NCBI GenBank assembly: GCA_021613535.1
Contig: CP075495.1
Location: forward strand, 13,020,001 to 13,084,000
Source of the DNA: Adineta vaga
Lineage: Eukaryota > Animalia > Rotifera
Direction: 5' to 3'
DNA length: 64,000 bases
Shown here: piece after piece, positions 56,043-64,000 of the stretch
Numbering within the stretch: the stretch's first letter is position 1
Layout of the letters: the number at the start of each line of letters is the position of its first letter
Translations under genes and position numbers: made by a program
The notes under the pieces: generated by a model
What the model was told of the DNA's origin: nothing
What the model saw: only the letters and a program-made list of their open reading frames with translations
Database searches by the model: none

Positions 56043-57326
56043 ATGAATACTGTCCATCCCTTAGGATTTCTACCGAAAATATTTACCATTCGACAACGTT
56101 CTTCATTTAATGAACTTCGACCAGTTAGTTTAGTTAAATTAGAACGTGGTATTGCTCAACGTTCCTTACTCTATTGTTTAGAAAAAGGCTATTTTTCATT
56201 GATTCATTATTTACTTCAATCTAATGTATGTGATGTTCGTGAACGTGATAGTGAAGGACGTACAGCTTTAATGTATTGTTGTTTCATTGAAAATGATAGT
56301 TGGACACAAAATATGGCGACGATTTTATTAGAATTTGGTGCAAAAATTGGTGATCAAGATCAAAATGGATTGAATGCTTTACATTATGCAATTATAACAC
56401 AACGAATAAATTTAATTCGACGTTATCTTACATCAATAGATTTTAATCTTAATCAAGCAATAGATATTCATGGTAATACATGTTTGCATTATGCTGCATC
56501 TACAGGTGATTTGAATATCATTCATCTTGTATTGAAAGCTATGAAACGCTATTCAGTTGATTTATCGATGAAAAATCATTTTGGTTTAACAGCATATGAT
56601 ATTGCTTGTCAGAATACGAATGAAGTTTGTCAAAATTTCTTACGTAATGAAACGACAAATTCTGAACTAAATGAACTATCAACAACAAATGAATCACCAT
56701 TGATTTTTGAATCGACACTTGATCGACGTTTCTCGTCAGCATCACAAACACATTCAACAATATCGAATCGATTTCGTTCAACAACACCAGGAATACAAAG
56801 AAATATGTCAATGAAACCTCCATCTTTATTAATGTCGGCTAATTCAAAAAATCTTCGTAAATCATCTGCAAGTATGTCAACAGTTCAAACGGAAAAAATC
56901 GGTTCTCGTTCATCAATTTTAATTGATCCAACTGAATCGCGACATATTCGACTTCGACGTAACAGAATTCTTGATCTATCACTTTTAAATCAAGCTAAAA
57001 CTATATCAAATTCAAAAACATCATCAATCAACGGTCAAAATGGCCTCTTTAGTGCATCACCATCATCATCAACCTGGCGTGATGATTTTACAAAAATATT
57101 TGATCGTTTACAAACTGTAAAAACACCTTCCTATAGAGAAACAATTCATCCACCATTAAATACAGAAATACCCGCTGATTTATATCCAAGTCTTTTGGCA
57201 ACCAATGATACATTTCGAAGTGACAATGTTGGTATGCAATCAGCTGCATTAGATTCATCACAAAAAATCAATCGACGACGAAGTAGTGTTATGGTTTCGA
57301 AATTTATTTCCAAATTAAGAAAATGA
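56043..57326 (+). CDS. Ankyrin-repeat protein with a Ser-rich tail, single exon
   Basis: GRTALMYCC, GLNALHYA, GNTCLHYAA, GLTAYDIA ankyrin repeats. Confidence 0.9.
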   Translation: MNTVHPLGFLPKIFTIRQRSSFNELRPVSLVKLERGIAQRSLLYCLEKGYFSLIHYLLQSNVCDVRERDSEGRTALMYCCFIENDSWTQNMATILLEFGAKIGDQDQNGLNALHYAIITQRINLIRRYLTSIDFNLNQAIDIHGNTCLHYAASTGDLNIIHLVLKAMKRYSVDLSMKNHFGLTAYDIACQNTNEVCQNFLRNETTNSELNELSTTNESPLIFESTLDRRFSSASQTHSTISNRFRSTTPGIQRNMSMKPPSLLMSANSKNLRKSSASMSTVQTEKIGSRSSILIDPTESRHIRLRRNRILDLSLLNQAKTISNSKTSSINGQNGLFSASPSSSTWRDDFTKIFDRLQTVKTPSYRETIHPPLNTEIPADLYPSLLATNDTFRSDNVGMQSAALDSSQKINRRRSSVMVSKFISKLRK

Positions 57327-57599: not shown

Positions 57600-58745
57600 T
57601 CAGAAATAAACTTCACTAGTTGGCCTTAATAATGTTATTATCGACAATGTACGAAATACGAACATGTATAAAATAGGATCGATAAGAAATATAAACATTT
57701 GTACATAAAAGAGAATTGATTTCATCATTAAGTTATGTTCAAATGGGATATGTATAAATATTACAAGTAAAATATTGATTAATGTCCAGAAAAGAATAAT
57801 TAAGGAACTAAATTGAAATTGTTTTTGTTGTTCAACAATGATTTTGTGTTGATATTGATCAATTTGAAATGTTAGTAAGTATTTTAATAATCGTTGTTCA
57901 ATACATTTCATTTGACGATGATGTATTAAGATTAAAAGAAGAAATGGAATAAAACAAGTGATTGAGAGAACAAAAAATGTGTAAGATAAACGAAATGTAT
58001 AATTAACAATACAAATTCGAAGAATGAAATCAAATTGAATCGATGCCCATTCATCAGTTATTGTTGGCCAAGTAAATAAACACAAACATATGAAAATACT
58101 TAAAAAAATGAATGATAAACGACGATATGTTATGGTTTGCCAATATTGATTGAATTTAAAACATATATACCAAAAAAGACGTATACAGATTGTTAAATTT
58201 AAATGAAATAATGTTAAAACATGAAGAAAAAAACTTTGTAAAAGACAAAAATTTGTTGAATATTGAATAAAATTTGGATAGAAAATAGGAATTAGATAAA
58301 TCATTAAACATAACCAATTGATAAGAAATAATGAGGTAACGAGAAATAGGCCGAATGATCGAATTGTTCGAATTAATATAGTTTCTGATTCCAGAATAAT
58401 ATGTGATAATAAAGATGATGATGATGATGATGAATTTGTAGAAAAGATTTTCTTTGTCGAACGAGATTTCGAAGTTTCTAGTTGAAGGACTTCGGAACAG
58501 GATTGGTCGATATCTAATGATAGTTTTGAGTTTAAATCTTTATGAATGATTTGTGTAGAATAACGATATGAGAAATGTTTGGAAATTTTAAATATTTGCC
58601 AATAATTATGAAAAAATGTTGTTAAAAAGAATATAATATGAATAAAACTATTTAAAATCAAATAGAATAACGTGATTATTATCATTGATCTCTTGGTATT
58701 CATCGATATTTCTAATCCGATTGATTGATTTGTAGGAGAAGACAT
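57600..58745 (-). CDS. Intronless rhodopsin-like 7TM receptor
   Basis: Seven hydrophobic segments, TM3 FCLLQ, ECL2 Cys (RICIV), TM5 FIP, TM7 DPILY (NPxxY-like). Confidence 0.75.
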   Translation of the reverse strand: MSSPTNQSIGLEISMNTKRSMIIITLFYLILNSFIHIIFFLTTFFHNYWQIFKISKHFSYRYSTQIIHKDLNSKLSLDIDQSCSEVLQLETSKSRSTKKIFSTNSSSSSSSLLSHIILESETILIRTIRSFGLFLVTSLFLINWLCLMIYLIPIFYPNFIQYSTNFCLLQSFFLHVLTLFHLNLTICIRLFWYICFKFNQYWQTITYRRLSFIFLSIFICLCLFTWPTITDEWASIQFDFILRICIVNYTFRLSYTFFVLSITCFIPFLLLILIHHRQMKCIEQRLLKYLLTFQIDQYQHKIIVEQQKQFQFSSLIILFWTLINILLVIFIHIPFEHNLMMKSILFYVQMFIFLIDPILYMFVFRTLSIITLLRPTSEVYF

Positions 58746-59899
58746 CGAAATGTTTTCCTAACTTCGATCTTACGATGGAATATCGGTAACAAGTGTTCCC
58801 ATATGAGTGAATATTCTTCGATTGTAGGAGAAAGATAAGGAAGTAAATGAAAGAGAAGAAAAAAGAAAGAAAGAAAGAGTAGCAGATCGTAAAGTGCGTT
58901 TTTCTGTGTTTGGATGTATGGAAGAATGCATGTCGTTTGTATGCCTCGATCATATAGTTAGTCAGTATAGGGAAAGAGAAAAGGAAAGACAGAACACAAA
59001 TAAAAAATTAATTTCTCTCTATGGAATCTAATCTGCATGATGTCTCCTTTTTTTATATTGCTTCAATATAGTTCTGTTGTTTGCTATAATGATTCGAGTT
59101 GTCGTAGCAAAAAACAATCTCGTTTCTGTACAAACGTTTTGTTTCTAGACATCATCACTATTTCTCGCATGCAGGAAATCAATAAATTAACCAAGGCGCA
59201 AAAAACGCCTACAATCAACATCAACGCCTGGTTTGTTAATCAAAGAAAAATTACATTGTTGAAAGAGAATTCAAATTTGTTGGATCAGTAGCAAAATGGC
59301 TTGTTCGTCAATATTATTCAGTAATCTGATATATTGACATTAGTTTGATCGATTTTTTACGTTTATTTATTTCTCACAATAACCTATAAGTCTCTTGGTC
59401 TCCAGTTTTTCTCTCCATATGTTTGGCGTTTTTCTTCCGAATAGGTTTATGTGTTTTATCAAATCATTTATACAAATGACAATGTTTGATGTTTATTCAG
59501 AAAAAGCAACGACTGGTTACCCAATGATCAGTTATAATCTTTTGACATATAAGAAGAACAAAAAAGAAATCATAGAAGTTTTTCTTCATCTTTAGTTTGT
59601 CAGAATAATGAAATACCCTAGAACTATTTTTATCTTCATGAGTAAGTTTACGTATACCTCTTGTCTTTCTAAAAATAAACTGAATGACATCTTGATGGAA
59701 ATCGATCGATTGATCAATGATAGAGATTTCTTTACTTCTTCTAGTTATTATCTATATAACATGATAGAACAAAGAAAAAAAAACATAAGAAATAAAACCA
59801 CACGTGCAAGACATGATTAGTTTTACATGAGAATAGAAAATTTGTCTTTAAGGTTTAGTTTTTCAAGATCGTATTGCAAAAAACATTGTTTGTGGTAGA

Positions 59900-61046
59900 C
59901 TAACTACGACTGCGTGATCGTGATCGTGATCGTGATCGGGAACGAGAACGAGAGCTGGAAAACAAATAAATACGAAATATTAAAATCAAAAAGAAAATAT
60001 TTTCTTACGGTGAACGTCGACGATAATTATCACGATCGTAATTTGAACCTCGTCGACTGTCGTAACGATGATCACCACCACCACCTCCGCGACCGCGACC
60101 GCCACCGCCGCCGCCGCCACCTCTTCGGCTTTCTCGACAATCACGAGACATATGACCAGGACGTAAGCAGTTATAACATTGCATATTGTTCCGATTATTT
60201 CTACTACTCTAAAATATTACACAAAAATAAAAACGATAGATCAAGGATGAGTACTTACTCCGTCTCCGCCGCCGCCGCCTCCTCCTCCTCCTGATTCACG
60301 TCGTTTTGATCGCGCCCATTGAACAATCAATAATTTACCTTTATGATCACGACCATTTTCTCCTTTGATTGCTGCCTAGATATCAAACAAAATTCTATTA
60401 ATTTATCAAAAATATTTCTCTTAATTGAGAAAAAAACAAACTATTCCAGAAGAAGAAAGAAATCGACATAATTACTTTCTCATATAACTCAACATACCTT
60501 CTAATAACATAGTAATAAAAAGAACTCGGAAAATGAAAAAAGTGCACAGCGAATGTATGAAATATCACCATCACTTCCCATCAAACTGTTACTATGAAAT
60601 TTTACACGTTGTTCATCAGATATATAATGAATCGAAGACGTGCATAAGATATATGAAAAGAAAGCTCAGGGATGCATAATATAATTCTACAAGAAAACAA
60701 AAAATGCCGTGATTATAGATATACATATACATTTTTTTAAATATATATATATTATTAGATACATACCTCCGCATCAGAACCTGATTCAAATTCAAGAAAA
60801 CCATAACTTGAAGCATAACCTATACGAAAGTAATTGTGAATGATATTTATCTATTGAATATAATACTTGATGCGCCTTGTTTGAGTTCACATCGGACTAC
60901 ATGTCCATAATGTTCAAATATACTAATAAGAAAGAAAAATTAGAATCGATTGAGTTTTATTTACGAAAAAAATGGAATTACTCTTCAAGGTCATGTTTTG
61001 AAATATCACGGGCAATATTTCCAACGAATATTTCGACTTGTGACAT
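59900..61046 (-). CDS. SRSF7: SR splicing factor SRSF7/9G8-like (RRM, CCHC zinc knuckle, RS tail); multi-exon
   Basis: MSQVEIFVGNI (RNP2), YGFLEF (RNP1), CYNCLRPGHMSRDC knuckle, RGG-rich region, terminal (RS)n. Confidence 0.88.
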
Positions 61047-61626
61047 TGATAGAAAACTTTTGTTTATTCGGCAAATCAAATGTGTGAATATGTATATTAG
61101 TTCTTTCTTATCTTTCTTTTCGTACTCTTGTAATATGTATCAATCAATAGGCTTTGTTGTTATTGAGAAAAAAAAGAAAAAATCAATTGAAAACAAATAT
61201 TCACGAACGTATTAGAAATATTTGCTTTAATCTTTGTTAGAAGAAAAAAACATACTACTTTCCAACAGATGTCGTTCTATATCAATTCGTCATTTTTGGT
61301 ATTTTGATTTATCGACTTATTTAGATTGAGATAATTCTCTGTTCGATAGATTTAAAGCTTGTCTGCAAATTAAAGAAATGTCTTAGTTTTGTGCTCAAGG
61401 TATTTCGTCCTCGGATTTTGGCGCTGATATGAGTCCTATCATCTAATGAAATACTAAATGCGCCTTTCAAGGCTCAGATAGTTTTCTTATTAATAAGACT
61501 AAATCATCACTACTGTTGCCAGTTCACTTGACACCACTAAACAATTCTCGTCAGTGTTCAATACTTTTATTGATTTGATACTGATACATAATAAAAACTT
61601 TGCATCATTGGCGCTAAAATATCAAA

Positions 61627-64000
61627 ATGGTACATAACTGTGCAATTCTAAGTTGTCCACTTCATAATCGACGAAATATACGTAAAGGTATCTATATAAC
61701 TATAAATCATGTTCTTTCTTCACACTAATCTGTCATTTTTTCTTTGAATTTAAGGTCTTCTTTTTCATTCATTTCCTGTTGATCAACATCGTTTTGAACT
61801 ATGGCGTCAAACTGTATTCAATCATTGTTCACAAACACTTTCGATTAATAGACATTCAAAAATTTGCTATCGCCATTTTCAACCCGATGATTACATTGCT
61901 AATCATACTGGTTTAACACGTTATTTAAAAGCAACTGCTATACCATCAATCTTTACTGAAACAAAATTCGATTCAACATTGATCGATAATAATTCTATAT
62001 TAACATCACCAACAGATATGAATATGAATCAAAATATACATTCACAAACAACTGCATCATCATCACTTTTAATATTGCCATCAACTTCATCGTCATCAGA
62101 AGTTACATCAATAGTAACTGATACAAAAGCAAAACGACTTTTGAATACAATTGATAAATTACATCAAATTCAAAATGCAAATAAAGATATGACAACATCA
62201 AACATCAGTCTTGAAACGGAACAAATGAAAATAGATGAAGATGATCATCATTTTTCACTCGATCATTCATTACAAATATCTCAAGTTTTTACAATTGATC
62301 ATCTAGATGATTTAAACAAAGAATATCAATCGTCAACTAATACCAGTAAAGTTTAATGAAGATTCTCCAAAAATCTTATCTCTTGAAACTGTTTGTAGAC
62401 GAAATTTTCCCACAATCTTCTCTTGAATCTGATTCATTTCGATGTCCAAAAAGTCATCTCGAAGATGCTTTATTCAAATTTCTTGAACAAGCAAATCTTT
62501 TACAATATTATTCTGCTTTTATTGAACAAGGTTTGACGCTCGTCTTTAATTCCAAAACATAAACTATATCTTTTCAATTTAATTAGGTGGCGATGATTTA
62601 AAACAACTTGCAGAAGCACAAAATGATGATTTTCAAGAGATCATTACTCTCGTTGGAATGACATCGAAACCTTTACATATAAAACGTTTTAAAAAGGCTT
62701 TAGCTGATTATCGACAATCAATCAATGATATAGATATCAATCAATCGTATACATCGAGTTCACTGCGTTGTTTATCAACAGGATTATCATTATCTGATCG
62801 ACATTCAACATCAACAAATAATTCAATAAAAGTTAACAATCAAATAATATCGAATTGGAATGTAAATATTAGTTTACTTTGATTCTTGACAAAAAATCTG
62901 CATTATACGCGAAGAAAAGATTTGAAATTGTTATTTGTTTTCAGACGATTGATCCTAATAAAAATAATAATGCGCATCAATTATTGGATGATAGTCAACG
63001 AAAGATGATTGCTGATGAAGCAGAACGTTTAGCAAATTTATTACCATTGACAACAATGAAAAGATTCAATGGACAAAATAATATTTCCAAAGAATTATTT
63101 GTATAATTTTATATAGGAAAAATATCCTTGTATATTGATTTCTATAGGCAACAATGAATTTACCAAGAGATTTTGAAGATCGTTGGCAACGTATCCGAAA
63201 ATATTCAGCGATTTGTAAGAATTTTACAAAAGATTTTTTCAAAGACTCGCTTTTACTTCATATAACTTAGATAATCGATTTGATTCAAAGAAATCCAATG
63301 AAATAATGAGTTTACATGAAGTAATTTCAGAAACATATTTTAAACATTATCTTTATTTTATCATATATAAATCAATCTAGATTTTAATCAATGAAGCAGC
63401 AGCTGCTATTTGTTTTTATCGACCAGGTCCTTTCCTTAAGAATTGATCGGTATTTGTTCAACTATTTCGAACTTTAGAATATCTAACCCGTCGTGATGAA
63501 TTATCACATCTTGCTCGACGTATTCTTCAAAATATTGGAATTACTACCAATAGTACTCTCAAACGGTATCATAAATTCATTCTATTTCTTTCGTAAAATC
63601 AATTTTTAAATACTCTATAGACCATTAAATATGTTAACATGTGACATAACACCTGCAAAACAAGTTAAATTGAATATGTCTCTTGGAAAACCTACAACAC
63701 GACAAAGAGATCCAGATACGTTTCGATTAATGTGGCATAATCGTGAAGTATGAAATCTTATTAATACTTGAATTGAGATTGATTCAGTTTTTTATTATTA
63801 TAAAGGCAAAAGTTGAACAAATTCCAATTGAAATCGAAACACTTCGTTGTGAACAAAACAAATTATTACAACAACTTAAACAAAACACAATGGATTCCTC
63901 ATCATCATCATCATCATCTATAGATACTAATAATAGTTTAAAAAAACAAATTGATGAATTAAGTAAAAAAATTGAACAACTTAGTGATGAAGAGAAAAAT
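61627..64000 (+). CDS. NAB: THAP-domain/NAB (NGFI-A-binding corepressor) fusion protein; runs off the window end
   Basis: MVHNCAILSC...FHSFP...W...ICYRHF...LKATAIPSIF (THAP C2CH + AVP box) is in frame with NCD1 (ANLLQYYSAFIEQGGDDLKQL...VGMTSKPLHIKRFKKAL) and NCD2 (IRKYSAI..RFDSK..LHE..INEAAA..LTRRDEL..LARR). Confidence 0.9.

What the first reader, a model, noticed from the sequence alone, without database searches (positions are those of the whole stretch)
61627..63560. NAB corepressor fused to a THAP DNA-binding domain
Seen: exon 1 (61627-61687) and exon 2 (61755-62345) encode a complete THAP finger (C-x4-C...P..W...C-x2-H, AIPSIF box) and a Ser/Thr linker without stops. A 53-nt intron (62346-62398) links this in frame to NAB NCD1 and then NCD2. 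Known: NAB proteins (NAB1/2, Drosophila Nab, MAB-10) have no DNA-binding domain and are recruited by EGR-type zinc-finger factors. THAP is the P-element-transposase-type DNA-binding domain, and C. elegans CTBP-1 is a precedent for a THAP-corepressor fusion. Inference: a self-targeting corepressor created by domain capture, which could silence THAP-site or transposon-derived targets independently of EGR.
Basis: partly seen in the sequence, partly recalled or inferred. Interest (0 to 1): 0.8.

Follow-up and report, generated by a model that had tools for sequence, protein, structure and literature searches.

The report
Rotifer NAB corepressor carrying THAP finger
The only NAB corepressor gene of this bdelloid rotifer really does begin with a THAP zinc finger, so a cofactor that in other animals needs a partner to reach DNA probably binds DNA itself; every bdelloid examined has this build, and no paper found describes it.

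Summary
Observation confirmed at the stated coordinates. The gene has 12 exons (window 61627 to about 64646, past the window end). Its 791-aa product, the genome's own annotated protein P0166, carries THAP (aa 5-87, E 5.9e-12), NCD1 (234-306, 5.7e-28) and NCD2 (367-484, 2e-26).

The 53-nt intron 62346-62398 is supported by comparison, not by RNA:
- Three other bdelloid species have an intron at the corresponding place, in the same phase, with GT..AG ends.
- The NAB part has no start codon of its own in those three.
- A related metagenomic bdelloid has THAP, linker and NCD1 in one unbroken 304-codon genomic ORF, and three further ORFs also lack intron 2.

The genome has one NAB locus. THAP is as constrained as NCD1 (dN/dS 0.04-0.11 against 0.03-0.08). 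No RNA evidence could be obtained: the four runs laid were DNA.

The fusion occurs in all annotated Adineta and Rotaria species, and in a monogonont-type sequence whose nearest named relatives are Brachionus NABs. It is therefore probably older than the bdelloids. Other animal NABs found lack THAP. A conserved helical linker motif (K..LL..IDKLH) is shared by all rotifer NABs.

DNA binding, repression and independence from EGR are inferred, not shown. The entries exist in databases under automatic names; four paper searches found no description. I rate it a new variant of a known kind, of moderate interest.

The parts
61627..61687 (+). Exon 1: start codon and the first zinc-binding pair of the THAP finger (C5, C10), ending in phase 1
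   Evidence: The same 61-nt exon occurs in A. ricciae, A. steineri and R. sordida.
61688..61754 (+). Intron 1 (67 nt, gtatct..tttaag), inside the THAP domain
   Evidence: It is exactly absent from the metagenomic bdelloid contig L004.
61755..62345 (+). Exon 2: the rest of THAP (to aa 87, nt 61954) and the Ser/Thr/Asn-rich linker
   Evidence: Pfam THAP 8.5e-10. It is open for 196 codons. dN/dS is 0.04-0.11 for THAP and 0.3-1.1 for the linker.
62126..62164 (+). Conserved linker motif, K145 to H157 (KAKRLLNTIDKLH)
   Evidence: It holds the only invariant residues (L149, I153, K155, L156) across 23 rotifer NAB sequences, Brachionus included. It is predicted as a helix, aa 144-162, with pLDDT 64-81 in an otherwise disordered linker. 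dN/dS is 0.06-0.40.
62346..62398 (+). Intron 2 (53 nt, phase 1), the join between the THAP part and the NAB part. It contains an in-frame TAA (62354-62356) and an overlapping ATG (62356) in the exon-3 frame.
   Evidence: An intron lies at the corresponding place and in the same phase in three other species, with lengths 62, 63 and 56 nt, all with stops on read-through and none with a usable ATG. It is absent from the genomic ORFs P0009, P0200, P0203 and P0204.
62399..62530 (+). Exon 3: end of the linker and first half of NCD1 (NCD1 starts at about nt 62446)
   Evidence: Pfam SAM_NCD1 2.3e-5. There is no in-frame ATG in this exon.
62587..62861 (+). Exon 4: second half of NCD1 (to about nt 62720) and a variable spacer
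   Evidence: Pfam SAM_NCD1 5.3e-16. dN/dS of NCD1 is 0.03-0.08. The model is a five-helix SAM-like bundle with pLDDT 88-96.
62945..63565 (+). Exons 5-9 (62945-63100, 63148-63214, 63271-63320, 63381-63426, 63478-63565), encoding NCD2 (aa 367-484, about nt 62984-63551)
   Evidence: Exon map. Pfam NCD2 2e-26 on P0166. dN/dS is 0.07-0.15.
63621..64000 (+). Exon 10 (63621-63747) and exon 11 (63806-64032, cut by the window end). Exon 11 holds a conserved Lys/Glu/Gln-rich stretch that I take for a coiled coil from its sequence alone. Exon 12 (64091-64646, stop codon included) lies beyond the window, in L001.
   Evidence: dN/dS of aa 531-620 is 0.14-0.26.

Best explanation
This is one gene, the only NAB gene of this bdelloid rotifer genome. 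Its product runs, in order: an N-terminal C2CH THAP zinc finger; a disordered linker of about 145 residues with one conserved basic amphipathic helix (K..LL..IDKLH); the SAM-like NCD1 domain; the NCD2 domain; and a conserved charged C-terminal part.

Shown here:
- The domains are present.
- They are joined in one reading frame through a 53-nt intron.
- The same build occurs in every bdelloid examined and in a monogonont-type rotifer sequence.
- The THAP finger is under purifying selection as strong as that on NCD1.

Inferred from what the families do elsewhere:
- The THAP finger places the protein on specific DNA sites, through its beta-sheet in the major groove as in THAP1.
- NCD1 makes it self-associate and may still dock on EGR/LIN-29-type zinc-finger factors.
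- NCD2 and the C-terminal part silence transcription, in vertebrates through CHD4/NuRD.

On this reading the rotifer NAB is a sequence-specific repressor, not a pure cofactor. It parallels the THAP-CtBP protein of nematodes.
For: Architecture: Pfam on P0166 gives THAP 5.9e-12, SAM_NCD1 5.7e-28 and NCD2 2e-26. Exon-by-exon scans agree.

One coding unit:
- A. ricciae, A. steineri and R. sordida have the same 12 exons, with introns at corresponding places and in the same phases. Their intron 2 has GT..AG ends and lengths 62, 56 and 63 nt.
- Read-through of intron 2 hits stops in all four species. The in-frame intronic ATG exists only in this genome.
- The first in-frame Met of the NAB part lies inside NCD1.
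- Contig L004 has one 304-codon genomic ORF from the THAP start through NCD1, in the same gene order (ankyrin gene upstream, ATP-citrate lyase downstream).
- ORFs P0200, P0203 and P0204 also run from the linker into NCD1 without intron 2.

Single locus.

Selection: dN/dS is 0.04-0.11 for THAP, 0.03-0.08 for NCD1 and 0.07-0.15 for NCD2.

Spread:
- All annotated Adineta and Rotaria proteins carry the three domains.
- The split Rotaria sp. Silwood2 models break at intron 3, not at the THAP/NAB join.
- P0114 has THAP, the motif and NCD1 in one ORF. Its nearest named relatives are Brachionus NABs. Its THAP scores 41.5 bits against this THAP, while every paralogue in this genome scores 16 or less.

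Fold:
- Among solved structures, THAP2 (3.5e-7) and THAP1 (3.4e-6) match best, with the zinc ligands aligned.
- The AlphaFold model gives strand-helix-strand for THAP and a confident SAM-like NCD1.

Family functions: NAB2 lacks DNA binding, NCD1 binds Egr-1, NCD2 regulates transcription and NuRD is recruited (PMC2768752). The THAP1 DNA-binding mode is described in PMC2879526.
Against: - There is no RNA evidence. The only runs holding the stretch are DNA contigs without joints, so splicing in this genome rests on comparison and on gene models.
- In the alignment, the position of THAP1 Lys24, a base-contacting residue that is usually Lys or Arg (PMC2879526), is Ser26 here, and that of Arg65 is Ala. 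The DNA target cannot be guessed, and DNA binding itself is untested.
- The THAP part of the model has only moderate confidence (pLDDT 57-76).
- An ATG at 62356, in frame with exon 3, could give a THAP-less NAB if intron 2 is retained or transcription starts inside the gene.
- The two Brachionus contigs show no THAP within 4.1 and 2.5 kb upstream of their NAB genes.
Confidence: 0.75

Rival explanations
1. There are two adjacent genes or transcripts. A small THAP protein ends at TAA 62354-62356, and a normal THAP-less NAB starts at ATG 62356. The fused model would then be an annotation artefact.
For: The TAA and ATG overlap inside the proposed intron, and the ATG is in frame with exon 3. No RNA evidence was obtained. 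The Rotaria sp. Silwood2 annotation has separate THAP-only and NAB-only models.
Against: The intronic ATG is absent in A. ricciae, A. steineri and R. sordida, where the NAB part has no start codon before the middle of NCD1. Four independent genomic ORFs run from the THAP/linker into NCD1 with no intron and no stop. The Silwood2 split lies at intron 3, and its THAP model already contains the first half of NCD1. There is no room for a terminator and a promoter between the two parts.
Confidence: 0.04
2. It is one fused protein, but the THAP finger does not target it to DNA by itself. The protein would still work as a cofactor brought in by EGR/LIN-29/Rotund-type factors through NCD1. The finger would then add only weak or non-specific DNA affinity, or serve as a protein- or RNA-binding zinc module.
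For: NCD1 is the most constrained domain. The positions of THAP1 Lys24 and Arg65 are Ser and Ala here (alignment read against PMC2879526). The conserved linker helix suggests a further partner.
Against: All structural hallmarks of a DNA-binding THAP finger are kept under strong selection. Loop 1 is rich in Arg and Lys, and Lys56 sits at the base-contacting Ser52 position of THAP1. From my own knowledge, the THAP domains characterised so far bind DNA.
Confidence: 0.18
3. The fused protein is real, but this genome also makes a THAP-less NAB isoform. It would arise from an internal start, or from retention of intron 2 with use of ATG 62356, so that both a cofactor form and a DNA-binding form exist.
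For: The in-frame ATG at 62356 would give a product with about 34 residues before NCD1.
Against: The ATG is not conserved in the three other species. It cannot exist in the lineages that lack intron 2.
Confidence: 0.1

Closest known systems
NAB corepressors (vertebrate NAB1/NAB2, Drosophila Nab, C. elegans MAB-10)
   Same: NCD1 and NCD2 are both over the Pfam cut-offs and in the same order. It is the only such locus in the genome, so it is the rotifer counterpart of these genes.
   Different: It has an N-terminal THAP finger and a linker of about 145 residues with a conserved helix before NCD1. In the NABs of other phyla scanned here, NCD1 lies within the first 130 residues or so, and none of those listed carries THAP. 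NAB2 is described as lacking DNA-binding activity (PMC2768752).
C. elegans CTBP-1, the THAP domain-containing CtBP corepressors (Nicholas et al. 2008, J Mol Biol 375:1, cited in PMC9907507)
   Same: The logic is the same: a corepressor normally brought to DNA by other factors has acquired an N-terminal THAP finger.
   Different: The corepressor moiety is unrelated (CtBP dehydrogenase-like against NAB), and the phylum is different. This is an analogy, not homology of the whole protein.
Cellular THAP proteins (human THAP1, THAP2, THAP11)
   Same: It is an N-terminal C2CH finger with all invariant residues. The best solved-structure matches are THAP2 (2d8r, 3.5e-7) and THAP1 (2ko0, 3.4e-6).
   Different: The finger is followed by NAB domains instead of a coiled coil or other tail. 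The positions of THAP1 Lys24 and Arg65 are not conserved.
Monogonont rotifer NAB homologues (Brachionus plicatilis 'NGFI-A-binding 2' P0214; B. calyciflorus P0217; unnamed P0114 and P0054)
   Same: They share the linker motif (KKGLSDVI.KLH) and NCD1. P0114 and P0054 also have an N-terminal THAP in the same ORF.
   Different: NCD2 is weak in P0217 (22.7 bits, below the cut-off) and not seen in the others. No THAP was found in the Brachionus gene models or their short contigs.

Membership tests
NAB corepressor family | NCD1 (SAM-like) domain | tested here: met
   PF04904 scores 5.7e-28 (97 bits, cut-off 24.3) on P0166 aa 234-306. Exons 3 and 4 match separately.
NAB corepressor family | NCD2 domain C-terminal to NCD1 | tested here: met
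   PF04905 scores 2e-26 (92.9 bits, cut-off 25) on aa 367-484.
NAB corepressor family | No DNA-binding domain of its own | tested here: not met
   A complete THAP finger occupies aa 5-87. This is the point of difference. I file it as a NAB variant, not a typical member.
NAB corepressor family | NCD1 binds the R1 motif of EGR-type factors; repression through CHD4/NuRD | not testable with these tools
   This needs binding and reporter assays. Searches of the genome with the EGR N-terminal Pfam families gave nothing usable. That does not show absence, because those models are vertebrate-centred.
THAP zinc-finger family | C-x2-4-C-x35-53-C-x2-H signature with the invariant P, W, F and a C-terminal AVPTIF-like box, at the N-terminus | tested here: met
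   C5, C10, C58, H61, P28, W37, F62 and AIPSIF 82-87 are read. PF05485 scores 46.6 bits (cut-off 23.9) over the whole profile, positions 1-87.
THAP zinc-finger family | Strand-helix-strand THAP fold | tested here: inconclusive
   The model shows strand 24-26, helix 31-44 and strand 56-58, as expected, but with pLDDT only 57-76. Sequence matches to solved THAP2 and THAP1 cover the whole domain.
THAP zinc-finger family | Zinc-dependent, sequence-specific DNA binding | not testable with these tools
   This needs SELEX, DAP-seq or EMSA. In the alignment, the position of THAP1 Lys24 is Ser here.
P-element/THAP9-type transposase | THAP followed by transposase catalytic and GTP-binding domains | tested here: not met
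   P0166 has no transposase family match. The five weak Tnp_P_element hits in the genome lie elsewhere.

The most novel reading that the evidence does not exclude
THAP-NAB may be the ancestral NAB of rotifers, bdelloids and monogononts alike, and not a bdelloid oddity. It is the only NAB in the genome. A whole phylum would then have turned the EGR-dependent NAB cofactor into a self-targeting, self-associating sequence-specific repressor. The invariant linker helix (K..L...I.KLH) would be a new partner-binding element specific to this lineage.
Probability: 0.35. Interest if true: 0.6.

Novelty: new variant of a known kind. Interest (0 to 1): 0.5.

Why it matters
NAB proteins are the textbook case of a corepressor that has no DNA-binding domain and depends on EGR-type factors to reach its targets. 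A lineage whose only NAB carries a well-conserved DNA-binding finger is a natural experiment in turning a cofactor into a transcription factor. It is a second, independent case beside the THAP-CtBP protein of nematodes.

It is directly testable. The isolated finger can be used for SELEX or DAP-seq, the selected sites can be mapped in a 100-Mb genome, and one can ask whether the targets still overlap EGR sites.

The interest is limited in two ways. THAP is a domain that is often found fused to other protein parts, and the function here is so far only inferred.

Tried and rejected
1. RNA evidence. The one search for sequencing runs found only four holders, from one 2013 sample. Laid on the gene, they are DNA contigs collinear with the genome, introns included, with no joints. 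The runs guessed to be RNA held next to none of the words. So the junction 62345>62399 could not be checked by reads.

2. Six-frame search for NCD2 in the genome failed, because the exons are 46-156 nt long. The single weak hit on chromosome 5 (E 0.39, five stops) is noise: a search with the whole protein finds nothing outside this locus.

3. An ohnologue or THAP-less paralogue was sought and rejected. There is one NCD1 locus only.

4. The Rotaria sp. Silwood2 'NAB without THAP' models (545-552 aa) looked like a THAP-less form. They start in the middle of NCD1, and the matching 'partial' THAP model ends at the first half of NCD1. This is a model split at intron 3.

5. EGR partner. The Pfam EGR N-terminal families gave nothing, which is inconclusive.

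6. A THAP exon upstream of the Brachionus NAB genes was not found by tblastn or by a local THAP profile within 4.1 and 2.5 kb. The contigs are too short to decide.

7. The organisms behind P0114 (SRR13076519), L004 and L028 could not be named. A paper search for the accession numbers found nothing.

8. Paper searches on THAP + NAB/NCD1, THAP domain + bdelloid, THAP-CtBP and MAB-10/NAB found no paper describing a THAP-NAB protein. The survey of transposon-derived transcription factors (PMC10027918) mentions neither NAB nor rotifers.

9. No Rfam family matches in 58000-64000.
Full report
WHAT IS THERE

The window lies on chromosome 2 of a 100.8-Mb genome in six pieces. The DNA has about 30% G+C and introns of 47-83 nt. 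Earlier notes of this scan call the organism a bdelloid rotifer. The nearest named proteins are from Adineta ricciae, A. steineri and Rotaria. On a tree of the N-terminal parts, this protein pairs with the A. ricciae one (support 98/96).

The ATG is at 61627, exon 1 runs to 61687, exon 2 is 61755-62345, a 53-nt intron (gtaaag..ttgtag) follows, and exon 3 starts at 62399.

Scanned exon by exon and by reference, exon 2 matches Pfam THAP (8.5e-10). Exons 3 and 4 match the two halves of SAM_NCD1 (2.3e-5 and 5.3e-16).

A note on method. Pfam and the large representative search were run on single exons. Later the word search returned the genome's own annotated 791-aa product as a stored protein, P0166. 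All further work on the whole protein used that id. In local scripts I joined exons only to check that they translate exactly to the stored proteins and to build codon alignments.

P0166 carries THAP (aa 5-87, 5.9e-12), SAM_NCD1 (234-306, 5.7e-28) and NCD2 (367-484, 2e-26). The gene has 12 exons, from 61627 to about 64646, and so runs 646 nt past the window.

The THAP signature is complete: C5-x4-C10, P28, W37, C58-x2-H61, F62 and AIPSIF. Among solved structures the best sequence matches are human THAP2 (3.5e-7) and THAP1 (3.4e-6), aligned over the whole domain with the zinc ligands in register.

IS IT ONE CODING UNIT?

This was the crux. Reading through intron 2 gives TAA at 62354-62356, overlapped by an ATG at 62356 in frame with exon 3. 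The locus could therefore have been a small THAP gene followed by an ordinary NAB gene.

Reads could not settle it. The only runs that hold the stretch come from one 2013 sample. Their contigs are collinear with the genome, introns included, and show no joints. They are DNA, probably from the strain that was assembled.

Comparative evidence settles it instead, in four ways.

- Gene structure. I mapped the annotated proteins of A. ricciae, A. steineri and R. sordida onto their own genomic loci. All have the same 12 exons, with introns at corresponding places and in the same phases. Intron 2 is phase 1, has GT..AG ends, and is 62, 56 and 63 nt long.
- Reading frames. In all four species, read-through of intron 2 meets stops. 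Only this genome has an in-frame ATG in the intron. Without the THAP exons, the first in-frame Met of the NAB part falls inside NCD1.
- An unbroken ORF. Protein P0009, found with exon 4, is encoded on metagenomic contigs of 60-107 kb as one uninterrupted 304-codon ORF. It runs from the THAP start codon through the linker and NCD1. Introns 1 and 3 are missing to the base in the DNA alignment. The gene order is the same as here, with an ankyrin-repeat gene upstream and ATP-citrate lyase downstream. At about 8% stop codons, by my own estimate, such an ORF has a chance probability near 1e-11.
- More ORFs without intron 2. Three further genomic ORFs (P0200, P0203, P0204) read through intron 1 in frame and run from the linker into NCD1 with no intron 2. 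On a poorly resolved tree, the forms without intron 2 fall in at least three separate groups. That is what repeated loss of an ordinary intron inside one gene would give.

The residues on both sides of the junction are also homologous between species (alignment).

The apparent exception is Rotaria sp. Silwood2, which has NAB-only models. It is a model split at intron 3, which is 1940 nt long in R. sordida. Its 'partial' THAP model already includes the first half of NCD1.

The genome has no second NAB: one NCD1 locus, and no match to P0166 elsewhere.

CONSTRAINT AND ANATOMY

Pairwise dN/dS among the four species:

| Region | dN/dS |
|---|---|
| THAP | 0.04-0.11 |
| NCD1 | 0.03-0.08 |
| NCD2 | 0.07-0.15 |
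| Linker | 0.3-1.1 |
| Linker motif, aa 140-165 | 0.06-0.40 |

I aligned 23 rotifer sequences: bdelloids, two unnamed THAP-bearing proteins and the Brachionus NAB models. The only invariant residues lie in the linker motif: L149, I153, K155 and L156, with K145 and H157 nearly invariant.

An AlphaFold model of aa 1-330 built on that alignment gives the following:
- strand-helix-strand for THAP, with pLDDT 57-76;
- a disordered linker, with pLDDT about 30-35;
- a helix at aa 144-162, with pLDDT 64-81;
- a confident five-helix NCD1, with pLDDT 88-96.

HOW FAR DOES THE ARCHITECTURE REACH?

All annotated bdelloid proteins carry THAP + NCD1 + NCD2. They come from A. ricciae, A. steineri, R. sordida, R. 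socialis, R. magnacalcarata, R. sp. Silwood1 and the window's own genome. UniProt names them automatically 'THAP-type domain-containing protein'.

NABs of nemerteans, molluscs, nematodes, an echinoderm and fishes in the same search have NCD1 + NCD2 only.

Of 60 longer NCD1-bearing representatives, four have THAP: two bdelloid ones, plus P0114 and P0054. P0114 is a 408-aa ORF on a 2.1-kb Logan contig. P0054 is a 578-aa ORF on a 50-kb metagenomic contig. Both have THAP, then the same linker motif (KKGLSDVI.KLH), then NCD1. No NCD2 was detected in either.

The nearest named relatives of P0114 are the NAB homologues of Brachionus plicatilis (77% identity in NCD1) and B. calyciflorus. Its THAP scores 41.5 bits against this gene's THAP, while all five other THAP loci of this genome score 16 or less.

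So a monogonont-type rotifer also has THAP joined to NAB. The fusion is therefore probably older than the bdelloids.

The Brachionus gene models themselves carry the motif and NCD1, and P0217 has a weak NCD2 at 22.7 bits. They show no THAP, and none lies within 4.1 or 2.5 kb upstream on their short contigs. Loss, or a distant 5' exon, cannot be told apart.

MECHANISM

Shown: one protein with a selected THAP finger, a selected linker helix, NCD1 and NCD2.

Established for the families:
- NAB2 has no DNA-binding activity, NCD1 binds Egr-1, NCD2 regulates transcription, and NuRD (CHD4, HDAC1) is recruited (PMC2768752).
- THAP1 inserts its two-stranded sheet into the major groove, with help from the N-terminal tail and loops L3 and L4. 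Specificity lies in poorly conserved residues (PMC2879526).

Inference: the rotifer protein binds its own DNA sites, self-associates through NCD1, and represses through NCD2 and the C-terminal part.

Caveats. In the alignment, the positions of THAP1 Lys24 and Arg65 are Ser26 and Ala here, while Lys56 sits at the Ser52 position. The target sequence is therefore unpredictable and binding is unproven. NCD1 is the most constrained domain, so docking on EGR/LIN-29-type factors may persist. 'Independent of EGR' is not supported by anything here.

The transposon-silencing idea has no support either:
- the THAP is nearest to cellular THAP2 and THAP1;
- the gene has no transposase domain;
- the genome has only six THAP loci;
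- its five weak P-element-transposase hits lie elsewhere.

COMPARISON AND NOVELTY

The gene is the rotifer member of the NAB family, with NCD1 and NCD2 both present. It fails the family's negative hallmark of having no DNA-binding domain.

It works like the THAP-CtBP corepressors of nematodes (Nicholas et al. 2008, cited in PMC9907507). That is an independent case with an unrelated corepressor.

The architecture is visible in public databases, but I found no paper on it. I rate it a new variant of a known kind. The interest is moderate: a clean, conserved and testable case of a cofactor turned DNA binder. It is limited by how often THAP is found fused to other protein parts and by the lack of any functional or RNA data.

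Noticed in passing
L004:5001-5915 (metagenomic bdelloid contig); also the ORFs P0200, P0203 and P0204 (P0204 = L028:5001-5858): Intron loss differs between bdelloid lineages. L004 lacks introns 1, 2 and 3 of this gene but keeps the later ones. The three other ORFs lack only intron 2. On a poorly resolved tree, the forms without intron 2 fall in at least three separate groups.
   Followed up: partly
L031:4564-5715 (Brachionus calyciflorus, protein P0217 aa 216-599): The B. calyciflorus NAB homologue has, in the same exon as its weak NCD2, a stretch (aa about 360-460) with sub-threshold matches to transposase-type helix-turn-helix families: HTH_32 2e-5, HTH_24 3.7e-4 and HTH_Tnp_Tc3_2 0.0018. 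This may be a second, different capture of a DNA-binding module by a rotifer NAB.
   Followed up: no
L025:2512-4451 (Rotaria sordida): Intron 3, which is 51-57 nt long in the three Adineta genes, is 1940 nt in R. sordida. The Rotaria sp. Silwood2 annotation splits the gene into two models at this intron.
   Followed up: partly
G000 C6:3351645-3352464 and C3:11986258-11987070: The rest of the genome's THAP repertoire is very small. There are two tandem pairs of short THAP ORFs (196-243 aa open frames) on chromosomes 6 and 3, which look like duplicate copies of each other, plus one weak hit at C6:13692606.
   Followed up: partly
G000 C1:16134901, C2:16114241, C3:2186916, C3:1003050, C6:904060: There are five weak matches (25-30 bits) to the P-element transposase family PF12017. 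None lies near a THAP match, and two contain a stop.
   Followed up: no
window 56043-57326 (+), 57600-58745 (-); L001:4839 onward (+): The neighbours are conserved with the related contigs. Upstream lie a 427-aa ankyrin-repeat ORF and a 381-aa hydrophobic (membrane-like) ORF on the minus strand. About 290 nt after the NAB stop codon, ATP-citrate lyase begins.
   Followed up: partly
L001:1101-4900 (window 61200-64999): The DNA contigs of runs X1-X4 differ from the assembly at many single bases and a few 1-2-nt indels across the gene. This is consistent with a second allele or a collapsed haplotype in the sequenced clone.
   Followed up: no
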